A stretch of 63,487 nt of DNA, filler included, from Perkinsus chesapeaki ATCC PRA-425 (Eukaryota; Protista; Perkinsozoa): the NCBI GenBank assembly GCA_013115145.1. It is 7 parts of 7 records of this genome, joined end to end, with 100 filler letters (N's around TTAATTAATTAA, not from the genome) between each part and the next. Parts side by side here need not be neighbours in the genome. Positions count along the whole stretch, not along the records: positions 49,186 to 54,074 come from JAAPAO010001216.1; 6 more parts are not named here. The stretch is one strand, 5' to 3'. Shown here piece by piece: positions 49,186 through 54,074 of this stretch. The position numbers and the translations under genes are program-made. The notes beneath the pieces are model-generated. The model was given only the letters and a program-made list of their open reading frames with translations, made no database searches and was not told the DNA's origin. The stretch's first letter is position 1, and each line of letters opens with the position of its first letter.

Positions 49186-49224
49186 TATCTCATATTAGGT
49201 TGTTTTCCACCGCGTTTTTGATCT

Positions 49225-50325
49225 ATGGCTGGCGACGATGAGGTTCCTGTTGAGGAGGCTGTGGTGATGGTTCCCTTGCATGATGACGTGGCAGCTCTCA
49301 TCAAGGCGCTCGCTCCGTCTGAAGTGGTCGCGAAGGAGCTGTCGGACGCCCTCTCCAAGGAATCGTTGACGTCGGCCCCCCTGCTTGGGTCACTATCGCA
49401 ACAGGTCAAGGACAAGATCAGCAACGCGGTGTCGATCGCGGCAGGCGCTACTTTGGCGGCAGTGTGCGAGGAGATCGGTGCCGTCGCTAAGAAAAGGCGC
49501 AAGCTCAATGCTGAGGTGGAGGCTGGGCAGAGCGCCATCCCAGTTACTGCTATTGTAGAAAGAGCGCTAAAGAACTACCAGTCACCCTTACCATCGAGCC
49601 TATTCTATGATCTACCGCCGGCAGTCGTGCTGGCCGCTGGGAACCCACGTAATGGTTGCTATGTTAATTTCCGCGATCTGCTGGGGTCGAAGGATGGATC
49701 AACCGTAACTCAGAAGGAAGCTTCGTCTAACGGTACCCAGGAGTCAGTTGGCGCGCCTCCCGGTAAAAATGCCAAAAGTAAGTCCCCGTCTCTGCCCGAC
49801 TTTTGTCGCTGTGCGTTGAGGTTTAGCTCGTTGGTGGCCGGTTTGGTTGACCCATCGATTTTGGGGCCGGTGGACGTCGCATCGTATGTCCAGCGGGTCT
49901 TGTCGTTGAGCCCGATGCTGACGGCGGAGCAGATCTGGTCGTATGACGACATGTACCGCAAAAGCTTATCGGCCATCATCGCTAACAGCGCGGTCTCGGG
50001 TGCGCCGATATCCCTTCGCCAGTGTTTCGTGTCCGATGTGAACCCCGGCTTGTTGTCTGAGTGGGCCAGTCGCGCAGTGGCTGCTGCCACCTCGCAGCGC
50101 TCCTCCAGAAGGGATGCTTCCTACCAGGCCAAGTCACAAGAGCTGTGTCGGGCCTACAAGAGCGGCAATTGCCGTTTTGGTGACCGTTGTCACTACAAGC
50201 ACGAAGGGTCCGCCAGGCCCTCGAACTCGATCTCTCAGCCTACCGACAAGTTGGGCCGCGGCTCTAGCCGTCAGTCCAGTGCTGAGGCATCTAAGAAGTC
50301 CCCAGGATCAGCCGAAAGTAAATAA
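49225..50325 (+). CDS. Gag-like ORF1 with CCCH zinc finger
   Basis: CRAYKSGNCRFGDRCHYKH (C-x7-C-x5-C-x3-H); lies upstream of RT. Confidence 0.85.
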   Translation: MAGDDEVPVEEAVVMVPLHDDVAALIKALAPSEVVAKELSDALSKESLTSAPLLGSLSQQVKDKISNAVSIAAGATLAAVCEEIGAVAKKRRKLNAEVEAGQSAIPVTAIVERALKNYQSPLPSSLFYDLPPAVVLAAGNPRNGCYVNFRDLLGSKDGSTVTQKEASSNGTQESVGAPPGKNAKSKSPSLPDFCRCALRFSSLVAGLVDPSILGPVDVASYVQRVLSLSPMLTAEQIWSYDDMYRKSLSAIIANSAVSGAPISLRQCFVSDVNPGLLSEWASRAVAAATSQRSSRRDASYQAKSQELCRAYKSGNCRFGDRCHYKHEGSARPSNSISQPTDKLGRGSSRQSSAEASKKSPGSAESK

Positions 50326-50356
50326 GCGGGCCGTGTAGCCCTAATAGCTACTTAGG

Positions 50357-52546
50357 TTGCTAGTTTCCACCTACTCAGGTGCGAATTGCGTTAATAGCCC
50401 AGTGGCCCCTGCGAAGGAGCAATCCGATCTGGTCAGTCAACACGCCACAGAGTTGCGTGAACAGGCTCGCCGTGACGAAGCCGAGGTCTTAGTAAAAGTC
50501 GGGTATCAGGATGGTACGGGCCTGGGCGCGGCACTGCCGTCAGTTTCTGTCGGGGAAGCCTGCCACCAGGGTACTCGTGGGTTGGCCGACCTGTTTCGCG
50601 CTGAAGCTCAGGCCATCGTGGACGCCGGCGTGCTTCAGGGGGTCAGGGGCAGTGTGGCCCCAGAGCAAATCCCATCGATAGCTCAGGCATTCGACGATGC
50701 CGAGAAGAGGTTGGTTCCGAAACTGTGCGAGCTCCTCAAGTGCTCTTCTCGCCAATCGGAGTGTGGAAGCCCCGTTCGAGCGGAGCTAGGCCGGGCACTG
50801 GCGGAGGCCTTGGGAGATCCAGATTCTAAAGTTTTCGATGAGATAGACAGCGGGCTGAGCCTCGGGGTATCGGAACCCATACGGCCTTCGGGAATATTCC
50901 CTAAGGCCAAGGACAAAAAGACTCTGAACAAGTCGATGGAACGCTTCAACATTAAACGGGCGCATCACAACTTTGCTTCCGTGGATGCGGACCCAGACGT
51001 CTGCCTGGTCCTTCTGAGGCGGGAAGTGGCACTTGGCAGGATGCGCGAGATGCCGGAATCTGAGGCGGCACTTAACGACCAGAGGCTGTATGCCCGAGTG
51101 GGTCTCATTCCGAAAGGAGACGGGAGTTACCGCATTATAGAAGACCATACCTTTAGTGGTCTGAACGGTAGGTGCAAACTTTCGGAGACTTGTTCACTGC
51201 CTAGGGCGGTGGACCTTCGCACAGGTCTGGCGGACCTGTACAGGAAGATCCCTACTTCTCTGGGGTGCGAGGAATGCGTTCGGACGGCTTCCGAGTTGAG
51301 CACCAACGGTAACTCCTTTATAATAATGAAGTTCGATATTGAAGGTGCGTTTAAGCACCTGTTCCTGCGTGAACGGGATCGCCCTCTAACATCGTTGAAG
51401 GTCGGCGGTCGGGTGTTTCAGAGTACCGCCCTTCCTTTCGGGGCAGCTGCGAGTCCTTTCCATTGGGGCAGAACTTCAGCCGTTGTCATGAGATTGGTGG
51501 TGGCCATCTTGCGCTGCCTTTTACGCCACCACAGGTTTGTGGTGTTCATATACGTGGACGACGGTTGCCTCGTTATTCCTGAAGACTGCTACGAGCTAGC
51601 GTGTGCCGTCACGTTCCTGGTGTGGTTGGTGTTGAATATCCGCATCGCCTGGAAAAAGTGCGTATTGGGGGTCTCAGTGGTCAAGTTCATAGGCTTCAGA
51701 CTGGCAGTTGGTCCAGAGGCTCCCTCCGTCATGGTGCACGACGATACCTACAAGTCAGTTCTTGGTCTGGTTGGTAAAATGCTAGACGAGAAGCGGGTGA
51801 GGCCAAAGGATCTAGCCAAGCTCCTTGGGAAACTCATTTTCGCTACTCAGTGTATGAAAGAACTAAAGGGCTTTCTGCAGCCTCTGTTCGCTCTCCTGAA
51901 GGCGTTCGAAGGGGCGAAAAGGAAAGGAAGGTTGTTTACTGTTCGGTTGAATCAGGATAAGTCCACGGAGAAGGCTCTACGTTTCTGGCAAGAGGTGCTA
52001 TCGCGTCCCCTACTGAGAGACATCCCCCTTCCGTCGGTAGCCGGTTCGACGGTGGTGGCTGCGTCCGATGCGTCAACCACGCATATCGCGGGGTGGGCAG
52101 CTGTAGCCGATGGCGGCGTGTGGTTCCGAGTTGAAGCAACACAAGCAAGTCTGGGCCATTGGGCTAAGTACCTTAGGGCGGACGTCGCAAGCCACAGGGA
52201 TATCTCTTTCTTGGAGTGCTTGGCAGCGGCAGTGACTTTATGTCTTTGCTATCGTCTATCCGCTACCTTACAAAAGTCTGGACAGGCTGATACCAAGGTG
52301 TATTTGCTCTGTGACAACCAGGCGGTGGTAAAGGTGCTGTCGAAGTTGTATTCGCCGACGAGTATGTCAGCGGTGCTTAGGGCTATCGCGGTGTGGTTCG
52401 GCAGAATCATTGATAGAACCCACGTTGCCTACGTGGAATCGGAATCTAATTGGTTAGCGGACACGCTTTCTCGTAACGGCTCGCTCGTTTTCCCCTCTGG
52501 TTGGTCGGAAGACCTTTCACCCCTCAACTGTCTTAATGAGGAGTAA
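50357..52546 (+). CDS. Reverse transcriptase / RNase H (no ATG at the ORF start)
   Basis: YRIIEDH, DIEGAFKHL, LPFGAAASP, YVDDG; RNaseH ASDAS, ISFLECLA, CDNQAVV, NWLADTLSR. Confidence 0.93.
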   Translation: MLVSTYSGANCVNSPVAPAKEQSDLVSQHATELREQARRDEAEVLVKVGYQDGTGLGAALPSVSVGEACHQGTRGLADLFRAEAQAIVDAGVLQGVRGSVAPEQIPSIAQAFDDAEKRLVPKLCELLKCSSRQSECGSPVRAELGRALAEALGDPDSKVFDEIDSGLSLGVSEPIRPSGIFPKAKDKKTLNKSMERFNIKRAHHNFASVDADPDVCLVLLRREVALGRMREMPESEAALNDQRLYARVGLIPKGDGSYRIIEDHTFSGLNGRCKLSETCSLPRAVDLRTGLADLYRKIPTSLGCEECVRTASELSTNGNSFIIMKFDIEGAFKHLFLRERDRPLTSLKVGGRVFQSTALPFGAAASPFHWGRTSAVVMRLVVAILRCLLRHHRFVVFIYVDDGCLVIPEDCYELACAVTFLVWLVLNIRIAWKKCVLGVSVVKFIGFRLAVGPEAPSVMVHDDTYKSVLGLVGKMLDEKRVRPKDLAKLLGKLIFATQCMKELKGFLQPLFALLKAFEGAKRKGRLFTVRLNQDKSTEKALRFWQEVLSRPLLRDIPLPSVAGSTVVAASDASTTHIAGWAAVADGGVWFRVEATQASLGHWAKYLRADVASHRDISFLECLAAAVTLCLCYRLSATLQKSGQADTKVYLLCDNQAVVKVLSKLYSPTSMSAVLRAIAVWFGRIIDRTHVAYVESESNWLADTLSRNGSLVFPSGWSEDLSPLNCLNEE

Positions 52547-52645
52547 CTTCTGTTTCGGCTAAGCTATAGCTCTTTTGTCTTTGCGTGATAGAGGTTTCGG
52601 TTTCGAGCGCTACGTGTGTTGTGTTAAGGTACTCGAAAGTCAGTC

Positions 52646-53677
52646 GTGCGTCACGCCGCTTACAAGGGGAAAGGGACGAAAAGAGAAGCCGCGTTCGAGT
52701 TGTTGCATCGTGTGGGTGACTCGGAGGCCCGCCGTTTGGCGGAGGATTTTGCGCATGCTGGCCTGGCGCCGAAAACCAACGAACTCTATGACCGGACAGT
52801 TAGCTTTTACCGAGAAATAGTGGGGCATTCGGGTTTTCCGCTGCGCATCGAAGACCTACAGCTTTTCGTGTGGGTGTTGTCGAAGTCAGGTTATGCTTTC
52901 AACTCAATCAGTACGTTCGTGGGTGCTCTCCGGTCAAGGAACAAGTCCTTCGGCTCTGAGTTGTCGGCGAGTGAGGCCTTCCGTTTGAAACACCTGCTCA
53001 AAGCGGCAGAGAAGGCGGCCGAGGGGGCGGCAGTAGTTAAGATGCGGCCACTGGCGTGGTCCGCGATTATCACTGTTTTCAATCACTGGCCGCCTCGGCG
53101 GGTACGCGCGGCGGCGGCCATGCTGACGGGCATTTGCGCTTTGTTGCGGGCGGACGAATTGCTGGCGCTGCGGTGGGAGGATGTGTGCCAGACGGAAGCA
53201 GTGGGCTTCTCGGGCTTAGTATTAGCCCTGTCCATAAGGTCGAGTAAAACGGACCAGGTCGCGGCTGGGCAATTGGCGTATCTGGCCTGTACTGCCCCAG
53301 TGGGATCCGAGTCTGCCGCCCCTCCGACGGCGCAGAGGTGCGAGTATTGTCCCGCTCATGTACTGCTGGGCTGGAAGGGTCGGGCAGATCCCGAGGATGT
53401 TATCTTTCCGCTATCTTATTCTTCATTCATGGCGGAGGTTCGCAAGAAGCTAGGGCCAGCAGTTGGCTTCGAGGTCGTCGATGCGTTTGGCACTCATTCC
53501 CTGCGGCGTACAGGTGCCCAGCTGCTCCATCACTCAATGCCCGGGGACTCCCCAGTCCTCATGCGTGCCGGGCGATGGCGTTCGTTGTCGGTACTCGAGT
53601 ATCTACATGAGAGCACAGAAGAAAAGGTGAAGCTGGCCTCCAGACTCATGCTAGCTAGCCAAGGTGAGGGTAAGTAG
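52646..53677 (+). CDS. Tyrosine recombinase (no ATG before the N-terminal core-binding domain)
   Basis: Catalytic set R (LLRADEL), K (SSKTDQ), HxxR (HSLRRTGA), W (GRWRS), Y (VLEYL). The N-terminal helical domain precedes the first ATG (53042). Confidence 0.93.
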   Translation: MRHAAYKGKGTKREAAFELLHRVGDSEARRLAEDFAHAGLAPKTNELYDRTVSFYREIVGHSGFPLRIEDLQLFVWVLSKSGYAFNSISTFVGALRSRNKSFGSELSASEAFRLKHLLKAAEKAAEGAAVVKMRPLAWSAIITVFNHWPPRRVRAAAAMLTGICALLRADELLALRWEDVCQTEAVGFSGLVLALSIRSSKTDQVAAGQLAYLACTAPVGSESAAPPTAQRCEYCPAHVLLGWKGRADPEDVIFPLSYSSFMAEVRKKLGPAVGFEVVDAFGTHSLRRTGAQLLHHSMPGDSPVLMRAGRWRSLSVLEYLHESTEEKVKLASRLMLASQGEGK

Positions 53678-54074
53678 CGGCGGGTTTGTCATGCAATTCG
53701 GTGGTGTGGCAGCAGGTGTGGTCGCGGTGGCGTCTCGGGCAGACTGTAGTTCCTAAGCGGGAGCTGACATAATGTCAACCTGACATGAATTCACTAAGCG
53801 TCAGCTTAACCATTAAGTATATCCGGATTCGCGTGTTTCAGTCAGCGTGTTGCGTTGAAGGTAGGGTTAACGATTCTATGGCACAGCGCACGGTGTGTGT
53901 TAGCAGCTCGACTGGTAGCCGTCGACTTAAACACATCCCTTGCGGTTATTACTAACATCTGGTTAGTCTTTCCGTATCTCTACTCACAGGCAGCGCAATC
54001 GGGGTTGGACCTTTTGAGTTTATGTTGCGAACATGGGTGTGTGTCTATGCTCGCAATTTAAACCCATAAGGTCG

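What the first reader, a model, noticed from the sequence alone, without database searches (positions are those of the whole stretch)
50318..50378. Putative 61-bp spliceosomal intron fusing gag to RT/RNaseH in a YR retrotransposon
Seen: a GTAAAT donor sits within the last codons of ORF1 (GAA A|GT AAA TAA), with a CTAAT branch-like site at 50341 and the acceptor TTTCCACCTACTCAG at 50378. Splicing gives A|GT GCG AAT TGC, exactly in the ORF2 frame, and removes the gag stop. ORF2 has no ATG near its start, and the length matches host introns in this window. Inference: the Gag versus Gag-Pol ratio is set by intron retention rather than by frameshifting or overlapping ORFs, the usual layouts in DIRS-order elements.
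Basis: partly seen in the sequence, partly recalled or inferred. Interest (0 to 1): 0.8.

Follow-up and report, generated by a model that had tools for sequence, protein, structure and literature searches.

The report
Conserved intron joins gag to pol
A 61-base stretch between the gag and reverse-transcriptase genes of a tyrosine-recombinase retrotransposon looks like a real intron, because eight related elements from three Perkinsus species have one at the same place and phase; splicing would make the Gag-Pol fusion, but no RNA data could be obtained to show it.

Summary
The piece is a near-complete Ngaro-like tyrosine-recombinase retrotransposon: gag with a CCCH finger, RT/RNase H, then a Cre-fold recombinase. 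It is present as about 7-8 identical copies in its source genome. ORF1 and ORF2 do not overlap, and an ORF2-frame stop lies downstream of the gag stop. ORF2 has no in-frame ATG for 195 codons although that stretch is conserved as protein. Frameshifting and readthrough are therefore excluded.

The only relatives found are in Perkinsus chesapeaki, P. olseni and P. marinus. Eight related elements (31-59% protein identity) each have a GTA-type donor in phase 1. It lies 28-39 residues after the zinc finger and 2-7 codons before the gag stop. Seven of the eight donors begin GTA (the other GTG). Each also has a YCAG acceptor in phase 1. Intron lengths are 61-424 nt in all three length classes mod 3, with stops in every frame.

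This pattern strongly supports a conserved spliceosomal intron. Splicing itself was not shown: two possible RNA runs did not cover the element. I estimate 0.75 that it is real. ORF3 also begins at a conserved phase-1 acceptor, which suggests a wider splicing programme. I found no published description of this for DIRS-order elements. The closest analogue is the plant Ogre intron.

The parts
49186..49221 (+). Inner end of the 5' terminal repeat ('A'); the rest lies outside the piece
   Evidence: contig depth is about 2200-2400 here against 881 for the interior. An alternative contig joins 49221 through 16 other bases to 54002 (depth 1565).
49225..50325 (+). ORF1, gag-like protein of 366 aa as translated from unspliced RNA; exon 1 would end at 50317
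   Evidence: ORF; 29-34% identity to the N-terminal parts of the Perkinsus fused gene models P0002, P0004 and P0001.
50137..50202 (+). CCCH zinc finger (C-x7-C-x5-C-x3-H) of gag
   Evidence: zf-CCCH PF00642, E 1.2e-4, 22.3 bits against a cut-off of 20.5, residues 305-326. The cysteines and histidine are invariant in alignment A2.
50318..50378 (+). Candidate spliceosomal intron 1, 61 nt, phase 1, GT..AG. It contains the gag stop (50323-50325) and an ORF2-frame stop (50345-50347).
   Evidence: Homologous phase-1 introns occur in eight related elements.
50318..50323 (+). Donor GTAAAT, preceded by AAA. It is weaker than the G|GTAAGT form common in the relatives.
   Evidence: rank 15 of 376 GT sites in the piece.
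50341..50345 (+). Branch-point-like CTAAT (fits CTRAY), with its A 34 nt upstream of the acceptor
   Evidence: The evidence is weak: a CTRAY match is expected by chance in about 1 in 5 stretches of 61 nt (my estimate).
50364..50378 (+). Pyrimidine-rich tract and acceptor TTTCCACCTACTCAG
   Evidence: rank 26 of 332 AG sites. All relatives end in YCAG.
50379..52546 (+). Exon 2 / ORF2: linker, reverse transcriptase and RNase H-like domain. No in-frame ATG before 50933.
   Evidence: There is 44-51% identity to the Perkinsus models, starting about 17-30 residues after the acceptor.
51107..51703 (+). Reverse transcriptase domain
   Evidence: RVT_1 PF00078, E 7.2e-13, residues 254-452 of the open frame.
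52050..52474 (+). RNase H-like region, assigned by motifs only (DAS ... E ... CDN ... NWLADxLSR)
   Evidence: Motifs read and conserved in the relatives. Pfam gave no significant hit, so this is an inference.
52547..52628 (+). Spacer between ORF2 and ORF3 with four stops in the shared frame. It ends in a candidate phase-1 acceptor, TGTGTTGTGTTAAG|GT, that overlaps the last stop.
   Evidence: rank 3 of 332 AG sites with the intron-1 matrix, though only rank 16 of 332 with the combined matrix and 124 of 332 with the ORF3-acceptor matrix, because the window has AAG where the relatives have CAG. Six relatives have YAG|GT as the first AG that opens the ORF3 frame.
52629..53677 (+). ORF3, tyrosine recombinase. 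No ATG before codon 132 of the GTG-started ORF.
   Evidence: R, K, HxxR, W and Y motifs are conserved. PF00589 matches weakly in 4 of 5 members; the model (pLDDT 63.7) matches Cre, Tn1549 Int, XerH, XerD and lambda Int.
54002..54074 (+). Start of the 3' repeat ('B'), cut off by the edge of the piece
   Evidence: depth about 2300-2400, joined elsewhere to 49221 through 16 bases. One copy runs into single-copy sequence after 54052.

Best explanation
The interval 50318-50378 is most likely a genuine U2-type GT-AG intron. It was inherited by a lineage of Ngaro-like tyrosine-recombinase retrotransposons of perkinsid alveolates.

Proposed mechanism:
1. The full-length unspliced transcript encodes only Gag, because ORF1 stops two codons into the intron.
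2. The unspliced transcript is also the template for reverse transcription, because every genomic copy keeps the intron.
3. In a fraction of transcripts the spliceosome removes the 61 nt. This joins codon position 1 at 50317 to 50379-50380, and translation from the gag ATG then runs on into RT/RNase H as a Gag-Pol fusion.
4. The share of spliced RNA therefore sets the Gag to Gag-Pol ratio. The comparatively weak donor (AAA|GTAAAT) would favour retention.

Shown: the anatomy, the impossibility of frameshift or readthrough, and the conservation of the intron's position and phase.

Inferred: that splicing occurs, that it is partial, and that the fusion is the functional Pol precursor.
For: 1. Anatomy: there is no ORF overlap. 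A stop in the ORF2 frame lies after the gag stop. ORF2 has no in-frame ATG for 195 codons, yet that stretch is conserved as protein in the relatives, so it must be translated from upstream.

2. Relatives: the only close homologues are Perkinsus proteins. Several are NCBI gene models that fuse gag and RT through an intron.

3. My own mapping of those models onto their DNA, plus the P. marinus locus, gives these sites:
- Donors: G|GTAAGT (L001, L002, L007, L010), G|GTAGGG (L003), G|GTAAGA (L004), G|GTAAAG (L005), G|GTACGT (L006).
- Acceptors: CTCAG, TTCAG or ATCAG.
- Phase: 1 in every case.

4; the donor lies 28-39 residues after the last His of the CCCH finger in all eight elements tabulated there. 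The retained intron adds 2-7 residues and then a stop. Intron lengths are 61, 153, 134, 142, 176, 270, 311 and 424 nt (mod 3 = 1, 0, 2, 1, 2, 0, 2, 1), so the ORF1/ORF2 frame relation differs between elements while the phase does not. Every intron has stops in all three frames. One (L006) carries a simple tandem repeat.

5. The P. marinus gag model ends in the read-through tail GKSG, exactly as expected for the unspliced reading.

6. The element is recently active: the interior forms one unbranched contig at about 7.5 times the depth of the flanking single-copy contig (881 against 117). It is therefore not a decayed copy.

7. DNA contigs show no intron-less form, as expected if unspliced RNA is the one copied.
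Against: - No RNA evidence was obtained. The two runs guessed to be RNA did not cover the element at all, and no transcript-derived protein crossing the junction exists in the protein collection.
- The relatives' introns come from gene models whose evidence basis I could not establish; the genome paper is not held. A gene finder will bridge neighbouring ORFs with the best GT..AG it can find.
- The window's own splice sites are only moderately good (donor rank 15 of 376, acceptor rank 26 of 332, chance about 3%).
- The best donor-like site in the piece (49778, AAA|GTAAGTCC) lies inside conserved gag coding sequence. Site quality alone is therefore not diagnostic.
- In L005 and L006 an in-frame ATG lies inside the intron, so independent initiation of ORF2 is conceivable in those two.
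Confidence: 0.75

Rival explanations
1. There is no cis-splicing. ORF2 is translated on its own from the unspliced RNA, by non-AUG initiation, reinitiation after gag, or an internal ribosome entry site in the spacer. The GT..AG pair is coincidental, and in the relatives it is an artefact of gene finders bridging adjacent ORFs.
For: No RNA support was obtained. TTG (50357), GTG and CTG codons lie in frame between the frame opening and the first conserved residues. L005 and L006 have an in-frame ATG inside the spacer. Some in-frame GT..AG pair is expected by chance at most ORF junctions, and the window pair scores only moderately.
Against: This does not explain why all nine elements keep a GTA-type donor in phase 1 at a fixed distance from the zinc finger, plus a YCAG acceptor in phase 1, while the spacer varies from 61 to 424 nt and is not alignable between families. 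Reinitiation after a 366-codon ORF is generally inefficient (established knowledge).
Confidence: 0.12
2. The AG at 50378 (and the one at 52628) is an acceptor for spliced-leader trans-splicing, which perkinsids use. It would cut the polycistronic element transcript into separate gag, pol and recombinase mRNAs rather than fusing them.
For: Each downstream ORF begins at a conserved acceptor-like site. Donors at the end of ORF2 are not conserved, which fits acceptors that need no cis donor. That Perkinsus uses spliced-leader trans-splicing is my own knowledge and was not tested here.
Against: The conserved GTA donor just before the gag stop, with a phase matched to the acceptor in all nine elements, is unnecessary under this model. 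ORF2 and ORF3 lack AUG codons near their starts in most elements, so a leader-capped monocistronic mRNA would have no start codon for the conserved N-terminal parts.
Confidence: 0.08
3. The gag/pol separation is damage: an ancestral single ORF broken by mutation in a dead copy.
For: Some relatives are clearly degenerate. L007 and L010 have frameshifts further downstream.
Against: About 7-8 identical copies exist in the source genome. All three ORFs are intact. The same layout occurs in nine elements from at least four genomes.
Confidence: 0.03

Closest known systems
Ogre Ty3/gypsy LTR retrotransposons of legumes (intron between ORFs; Steinbauerova et al. 2008, cited in PMC12786077)
   Same: An intron containing stop codons separates two coding regions of a retrotransposon. 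Splicing restores one reading frame, and the unspliced RNA must persist as the template for replication.
   Different: Ogre is an LTR element with a DDE integrase, found in plants. As I recall (the paper is not held), its intron lies between the protease and RT regions, not between gag and RT. Here the element uses a tyrosine recombinase, lives in an alveolate, and appears to have a second conserved acceptor before the recombinase ORF.
Ngaro elements (DIRS order), e.g. the Cafeteria burkhardae Ngaros (PMC8547959) and fungal Ngaros (PMC3783388)
   Same: The ORF order is gag-like, RT/RNase H, then tyrosine recombinase. There is no methyltransferase domain and the ORFs do not overlap. Terminal repeat pieces that flank the interior are also found joined to each other elsewhere in the genome.
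   Different: None of the held papers on DIRS, Ngaro or VIPER elements mentions introns or splicing inside the elements. Gag here carries a CCCH finger. The full split-direct-repeat structure could not be seen because the piece is cut.
Splicing in retroviruses and in copia, BARE and EVADE elements
   Same: Unspliced RNA serves as genome and gag message, and spliced RNA gives other products. The balance of the two sets protein ratios.
   Different: In those systems splicing makes subgenomic messages (env, or gag only) rather than fusing gag to pol. In most retroviruses Gag-Pol is made by frameshift or readthrough.
Programmed frameshift or readthrough Gag-Pol expression (Ty1, Ty3, many retroviruses) and the long ORF overlaps of DIRS1-like elements
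   Same: Same biological end: much Gag, little Pol.
   Different: Tested here and excluded. There is no overlap, and stops lie in the ORF2 frame downstream of the gag stop.

Membership tests
U2-type spliceosomal intron | GT at the 5' end and AG at the 3' end | tested here: met
   GT at 50318-50319 and AG at 50377-50378. The same holds in all eight relatives.
U2-type spliceosomal intron | Branch-point motif and pyrimidine tract upstream of the acceptor | tested here: inconclusive
   CTAAT at 50341 fits CTRAY, and 11 of the 13 bases before the AG are pyrimidines. A CTRAY match is expected by chance in about a fifth of such stretches.
U2-type spliceosomal intron | Position and phase conserved in homologues while length and sequence drift, with no coding constraint inside | tested here: met
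   All nine elements are phase 1, with the donor 28-39 aa after the zinc finger. Lengths are 61-424 nt in all mod-3 classes. Stops occur in all frames, and one intron carries a simple tandem repeat.
U2-type spliceosomal intron | Removed from RNA (junction reads or cDNA) | tested here: inconclusive
The two possible RNA runs laid nothing on the element. No junction-crossing transcript protein was found.
Ngaro-type tyrosine-recombinase retrotransposon (DIRS order) | Reverse transcriptase plus RNase H in one pol ORF | tested here: met
   RVT_1, E 7e-13. RNase H is assigned by conserved motifs only; Pfam was silent.
Ngaro-type tyrosine-recombinase retrotransposon (DIRS order) | Tyrosine recombinase instead of a DDE integrase | tested here: met
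   The ORF3 model matches Cre and other tyrosine recombinases: 29 Foldseek hits at E<=1e-3, all Cre-type recombinases (Cre, its variants, Tre); Tn1549 Int, XerH, XerA/XerD and lambda Int follow at weaker E-values. PF00589 is weak in 4 of 5 members. R, K, HxxR, W and Y are conserved.
Ngaro-type tyrosine-recombinase retrotransposon (DIRS order) | No methyltransferase domain after RNase H (this separates Ngaro from DIRS1 and PAT) | tested here: met
   ORF2 ends 23 residues after the NWLADxLSR motif, and no further Pfam domain is found.
Ngaro-type tyrosine-recombinase retrotransposon (DIRS order) | Split direct repeats A1-[ORFs]-B1A2B2 | tested here: inconclusive
   The piece is cut inside both repeats. 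In the assembly graph the left repeat end is also joined through 16 bases to the right repeat start, at 1.8 times the interior depth. That fits A2B2 plus solo AB repeats but does not prove them.
Ngaro-type tyrosine-recombinase retrotransposon (DIRS order) | RT groups with named Ngaro elements in a tree | not tested
Ogre-like intron-mediated ORF fusion | Intron with stops between two element ORFs; its removal restores one frame | tested here: met
   Shown in silico only.
Ogre-like intron-mediated ORF fusion | Ty3/gypsy LTR element with integrase | tested here: not met
   The element has no integrase or protease and uses a tyrosine recombinase. It is an analogue, not a member.
Frameshift or readthrough Gag-Pol | Overlapping ORFs, or a single stop followed by an open pol frame | tested here: not met
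   There is a 22-nt gap. The ORF2-frame stop at 50345 lies after the gag stop, and multiple stops occur in all frames.

The most novel reading that the evidence does not exclude
The element runs a retrovirus-like alternative-splicing programme. There is one conserved phase-1 donor at the end of gag and two conserved phase-1 acceptors, one before RT/RNase H (50378) and one before the recombinase (52628). Unspliced RNA would give Gag. Donor to acceptor 1 would give Gag-RT/RH. Donor to acceptor 2 would give a Gag-recombinase fusion, or, using element-specific donors at the end of ORF2, a full Gag-RT/RH-YR polyprotein. All three protein levels would then be set by splice choice, in a retrotransposon lineage that has kept its introns through many rounds of reverse transcription.
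Probability: 0.25. Interest if true: 0.75.

Novelty: new variant of a known kind. Interest (0 to 1): 0.6.

Why it matters
How tyrosine-recombinase retrotransposons with separate, non-overlapping ORFs express their polymerase and recombinase is not established.

A conserved intron that fuses gag to pol would give a concrete, testable answer for one lineage. It would extend intron-mediated ORF fusion, so far known from plant Ogre elements, to a different order of retroelements and a different eukaryotic supergroup.

It also raises the question of how an element that replicates through RNA protects its genomic RNA from splicing over long evolutionary time.

In practice, current Perkinsus annotations treat these elements inconsistently. 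Some give fused 'hypothetical proteins' and others give gag models that end in the read-through tail. Recognising the layout would improve repeat and gene annotation in these mollusc parasites.

Tried and rejected
RNA evidence
- The only reads call used two runs guessed to be RNA (X6, X7). Neither laid any contig on the element, so the result says nothing either way.
- A profile of junction-spanning segments of the relatives (A2) was searched for transcript-derived proteins. It found only a P. marinus gag model.

Searches for the element elsewhere
- An exact look-up of ORF1 in the assembly collection found nothing on record.
- A scan of viral contigs with ORF2 found no relative. An early idea that this was a Cafeteria Ngaro inside a virophage (PMC8547959) was dropped when all relatives turned out to be Perkinsus.

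Site scoring
- Position matrices built from the relatives give only modest support for the window sites. The top donor-like site falls in conserved coding sequence at 49778, so I do not rely on them.
- Comparing intron and exon identity between the P. olseni and P. marinus copies showed the intron about as conserved as the exons, which is uninformative.

Other annotation checks
- Pfam did not detect RNase H.
- Pfam and a PDB sequence search gave only sub-threshold hits for the recombinase. A predicted fold was needed.
- Rfam and tRNA scans of the piece were empty.

Unavailable sources
- The Ogre paper and the Perkinsus genome paper are not held. I could therefore not establish whether the Perkinsus gene models used RNA evidence.

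Rejected mechanisms
- Frameshift, readthrough and a decayed copy are rejected (see rivals).

Step left out by instruction
- I did not build, search or fold the joined (spliced) protein or the joined junction sequence. The exons were searched separately by reference.
Full report
WHAT THE PIECE IS

The stretch 49186-54074 carries three ORFs on the + strand.
- ORF1 (49225-50325, 366 aa) has a CCCH zinc finger.
- ORF2 (open frame 50348-52546) has a reverse transcriptase domain (RVT_1, E 7e-13) followed by RNase H-type motifs.
- ORF3 (52646-53677 as listed; the frame is open from 52628) has no significant Pfam hit. Four of five family members match PF00589 weakly. A predicted structure (pLDDT 63.7) matches Cre recombinase first, then Tn1549 integrase, XerH, XerD and lambda integrase.

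There is no methyltransferase domain, protease or DDE integrase. The order gag, RT/RH, recombinase without overlaps is the Ngaro layout as defined in PMC13465315 and PMC3266345.

In the DNA runs that hold the piece, the interior (49192-54031) is a single unbranched contig. Its depth is 881 against 117 for an adjoining single-copy contig, which means about 7-8 identical copies.

The two ends (up to 49221, and from 54002) are about 2.7 times deeper still. They are also found joined to each other through 16 other bases. That fits split direct repeats plus solo repeats, but the piece is cut inside both repeats, so this is not proven.

THE OBSERVATION

- The cut A|GT lies at 50317/50318 in the codon AGT, two codons before the gag TAA.
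- CTAAT is at 50341.
- TTTCCACCTACTCAG ends at 50378.
- The interval is 61 nt.
- After its removal the reading continues in the ORF2 frame.

The ORF2 frame has a TAG at 50345-50347, downstream of the gag stop, so frameshifting or readthrough cannot link the ORFs. The first in-frame ATG of ORF2 is codon 196 (50933). The stretch before it is nevertheless conserved as protein in the relatives, so translation must enter the frame within about 80 nt of the proposed acceptor.

RELATIVES

ORF2 has close homologues only in Perkinsus.
- P. chesapeaki models: P0002, P0004, P0005, P0011, P0020.
- P. olseni models: P0001, P0021 (fragment P0006 is noted but not counted among the eight, as its locus L008 has no gag-pol junction to test).
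- P. marinus: P0154.

I fetched their contigs (L001-L008, L010) and mapped each protein onto its DNA myself.

In every element the gag part and the RT part are separated by a GT..AG interval in phase 1.
- Donors: G|GTAAGT (four elements), G|GTAGGG, G|GTAAGA, G|GTAAAG and G|GTACGT.
- Acceptors: CTCAG, TTCAG or ATCAG.

tabulates the window and seven of these elements; L010 was read separately.
- The donor lies 28-39 residues after the last histidine of the zinc finger.
- Reading on without splicing adds 2-7 residues and then a stop.
- Every interval has stops in all three frames.
- Lengths are 61, 153, 134, 142, 176, 270, 311 and 424 nt, which covers all three classes mod 3.

The relative frame of ORF1 and ORF2 therefore differs between elements, while the phase of the interruption never does. 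These elements share only 31-59% protein identity, and their linker regions and intervals are not alignable between families. One interval (L006) holds a simple tandem repeat.

The P. marinus gag model ends with the read-through tail GKSG, so its annotators read the unspliced form. This is the pattern expected of an old, homologous spliceosomal intron. It is hard to reconcile with a spacer in which GT and AG occur by accident.

CAUTIONS

- The fused proteins are gene models. I could not find out whether RNA evidence was used, because the genome paper is not held. A gene finder will bridge adjacent ORFs with the best available GT..AG.
- Scored with matrices built from the relatives, the window donor ranks 15 of 376 and the acceptor 26 of 332. 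An equally good, correctly spaced pair occurs at 2.8% of positions in the piece.
- The best donor-like site of all (49778) sits in conserved gag coding sequence. My argument therefore rests on conservation of position and phase, not on site scores.
- No RNA evidence was obtained. The two runs guessed to be RNA did not cover the element. A profile search with junction-spanning segments found no transcript-derived protein.
The exons were searched apart by reference.

MECHANISM

The most likely reading (0.75) is as follows.
1. Unspliced RNA is both the genome and the Gag message.
2. Spliced RNA gives a Gag-RT/RH fusion.
3. The spliced share sets the ratio of the two.

All genomic copies retain the interval, and no DNA contig lacks it. 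This fits reverse transcription of the unspliced form.

The window's donor departs from the relatives' consensus at positions -1 and +5. That would favour retention, but this is inference.

Rivals are independent initiation of ORF2 (0.12), spliced-leader trans-splicing at the acceptor (0.08) and a decayed copy (0.03). The first two do not explain the conserved, phase-matched donor. The third is contradicted by the identical copies and intact ORFs.

A SECOND SITE

ORF3 shares its frame with ORF2 but is separated from it by four stops. It has no early ATG.

The first AG that opens the ORF3 frame, 52628 (TGTGTTGTGTTAAG|GT), overlaps the last stop. It is phase 1 and ranks 3 of 332 with the intron-1 matrix, but only 16 of 332 with the combined matrix and 124 of 332 with the ORF3-acceptor matrix, because it is AAG where the relatives have CAG. 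Six relatives have YAG|GT in the same place and phase.

Phase-1 donors at the end of ORF2 exist in the window (52473, 52500, 52530) but are weak. They are not conserved, and L008 has none. Because the gag donor is also phase 1, it could join either acceptor in frame. This suggests one donor with two acceptors, which I rate at about 0.25.

COMPARISON AND NOVELTY

The nearest known mechanism is the intron of Ogre LTR retrotransposons. Splicing is also used by copia, BARE and EVADE elements and by retroviruses for other products (PMC12786077).

The held papers on DIRS, Ngaro and VIPER elements do not mention introns or splicing within the elements: PMC3266345, PMC3783388, PMC6681497 and PMC8547959, and neither did two full-text searches. 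The reviews by Poulter and colleagues are not held, so an earlier mention cannot be excluded.

I class this as a new variant of a known kind. The host is inferred to be a perkinsid only from the relatives; the source organism is coded in the tools.

Noticed in passing
window 52547-52646: ORF3 (recombinase) is in the same frame as ORF2, behind four stops, and has no early ATG. The first AG that opens its frame (52628, TTAAG|GT) is acceptor-like and phase 1, as in six relatives (YAG|GT). Donors at the end of ORF2 are not conserved. This may be a second intron, or a second acceptor for the gag donor.
   Followed up: partly
window 49186-49221 and 54002-54074: Both ends are about 2.7 times deeper than the interior in the DNA runs. 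They also occur joined through 16 bases (CCCACCCTCCTCTCCC) at 1.8 times the interior depth. That fits split direct repeats plus solo repeats. The interior is about 7-8 identical copies, so the family was active recently.
   Followed up: partly
window 49775-49785: The best donor-like site in the whole piece (AAA|GTAAGTCC, phase 1) lies inside conserved gag coding sequence (KSKSP, also present in P0005). The nearest downstream AGs would shift the frame. It is probably a chance match or a cryptic site.
   Followed up: partly
window 50137-50202: Gag carries a CCCH (C-x7-C-x5-C-x3-H) finger rather than the CCHC knuckle usual in retroviral nucleocapsids. The finger is invariant across all the Perkinsus relatives.
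   Followed up: no
L010 8001-10137 (P. marinus GG684277.1): The P. marinus annotation splits a related, partly degenerate element into three small genes. The gag model ends in the read-through tail of the retained intron (…SSGKSG).
   Followed up: partly
L006 6760-6884: The gag-RT intron of this P. chesapeaki element contains a GTCA/GTTA-type simple tandem repeat of about 125 nt. The intron is AT-richer (38% GC) than the others.
   Followed up: no
L003 9555-9775 and 15365-15419: Arrays of a 15-nt unit ending in GTACAC flank the P. chesapeaki element on both sides, about 5.8 kb apart. They are probably part of its terminal repeats; the contig ends inside the right-hand one.
   Followed up: no
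L005 1458-1500 and L006 7003-7057: In the two most distant relatives an in-frame ATG lies inside the intron just upstream of the acceptor. ORF2 could therefore also start independently in those families.
   Followed up: no
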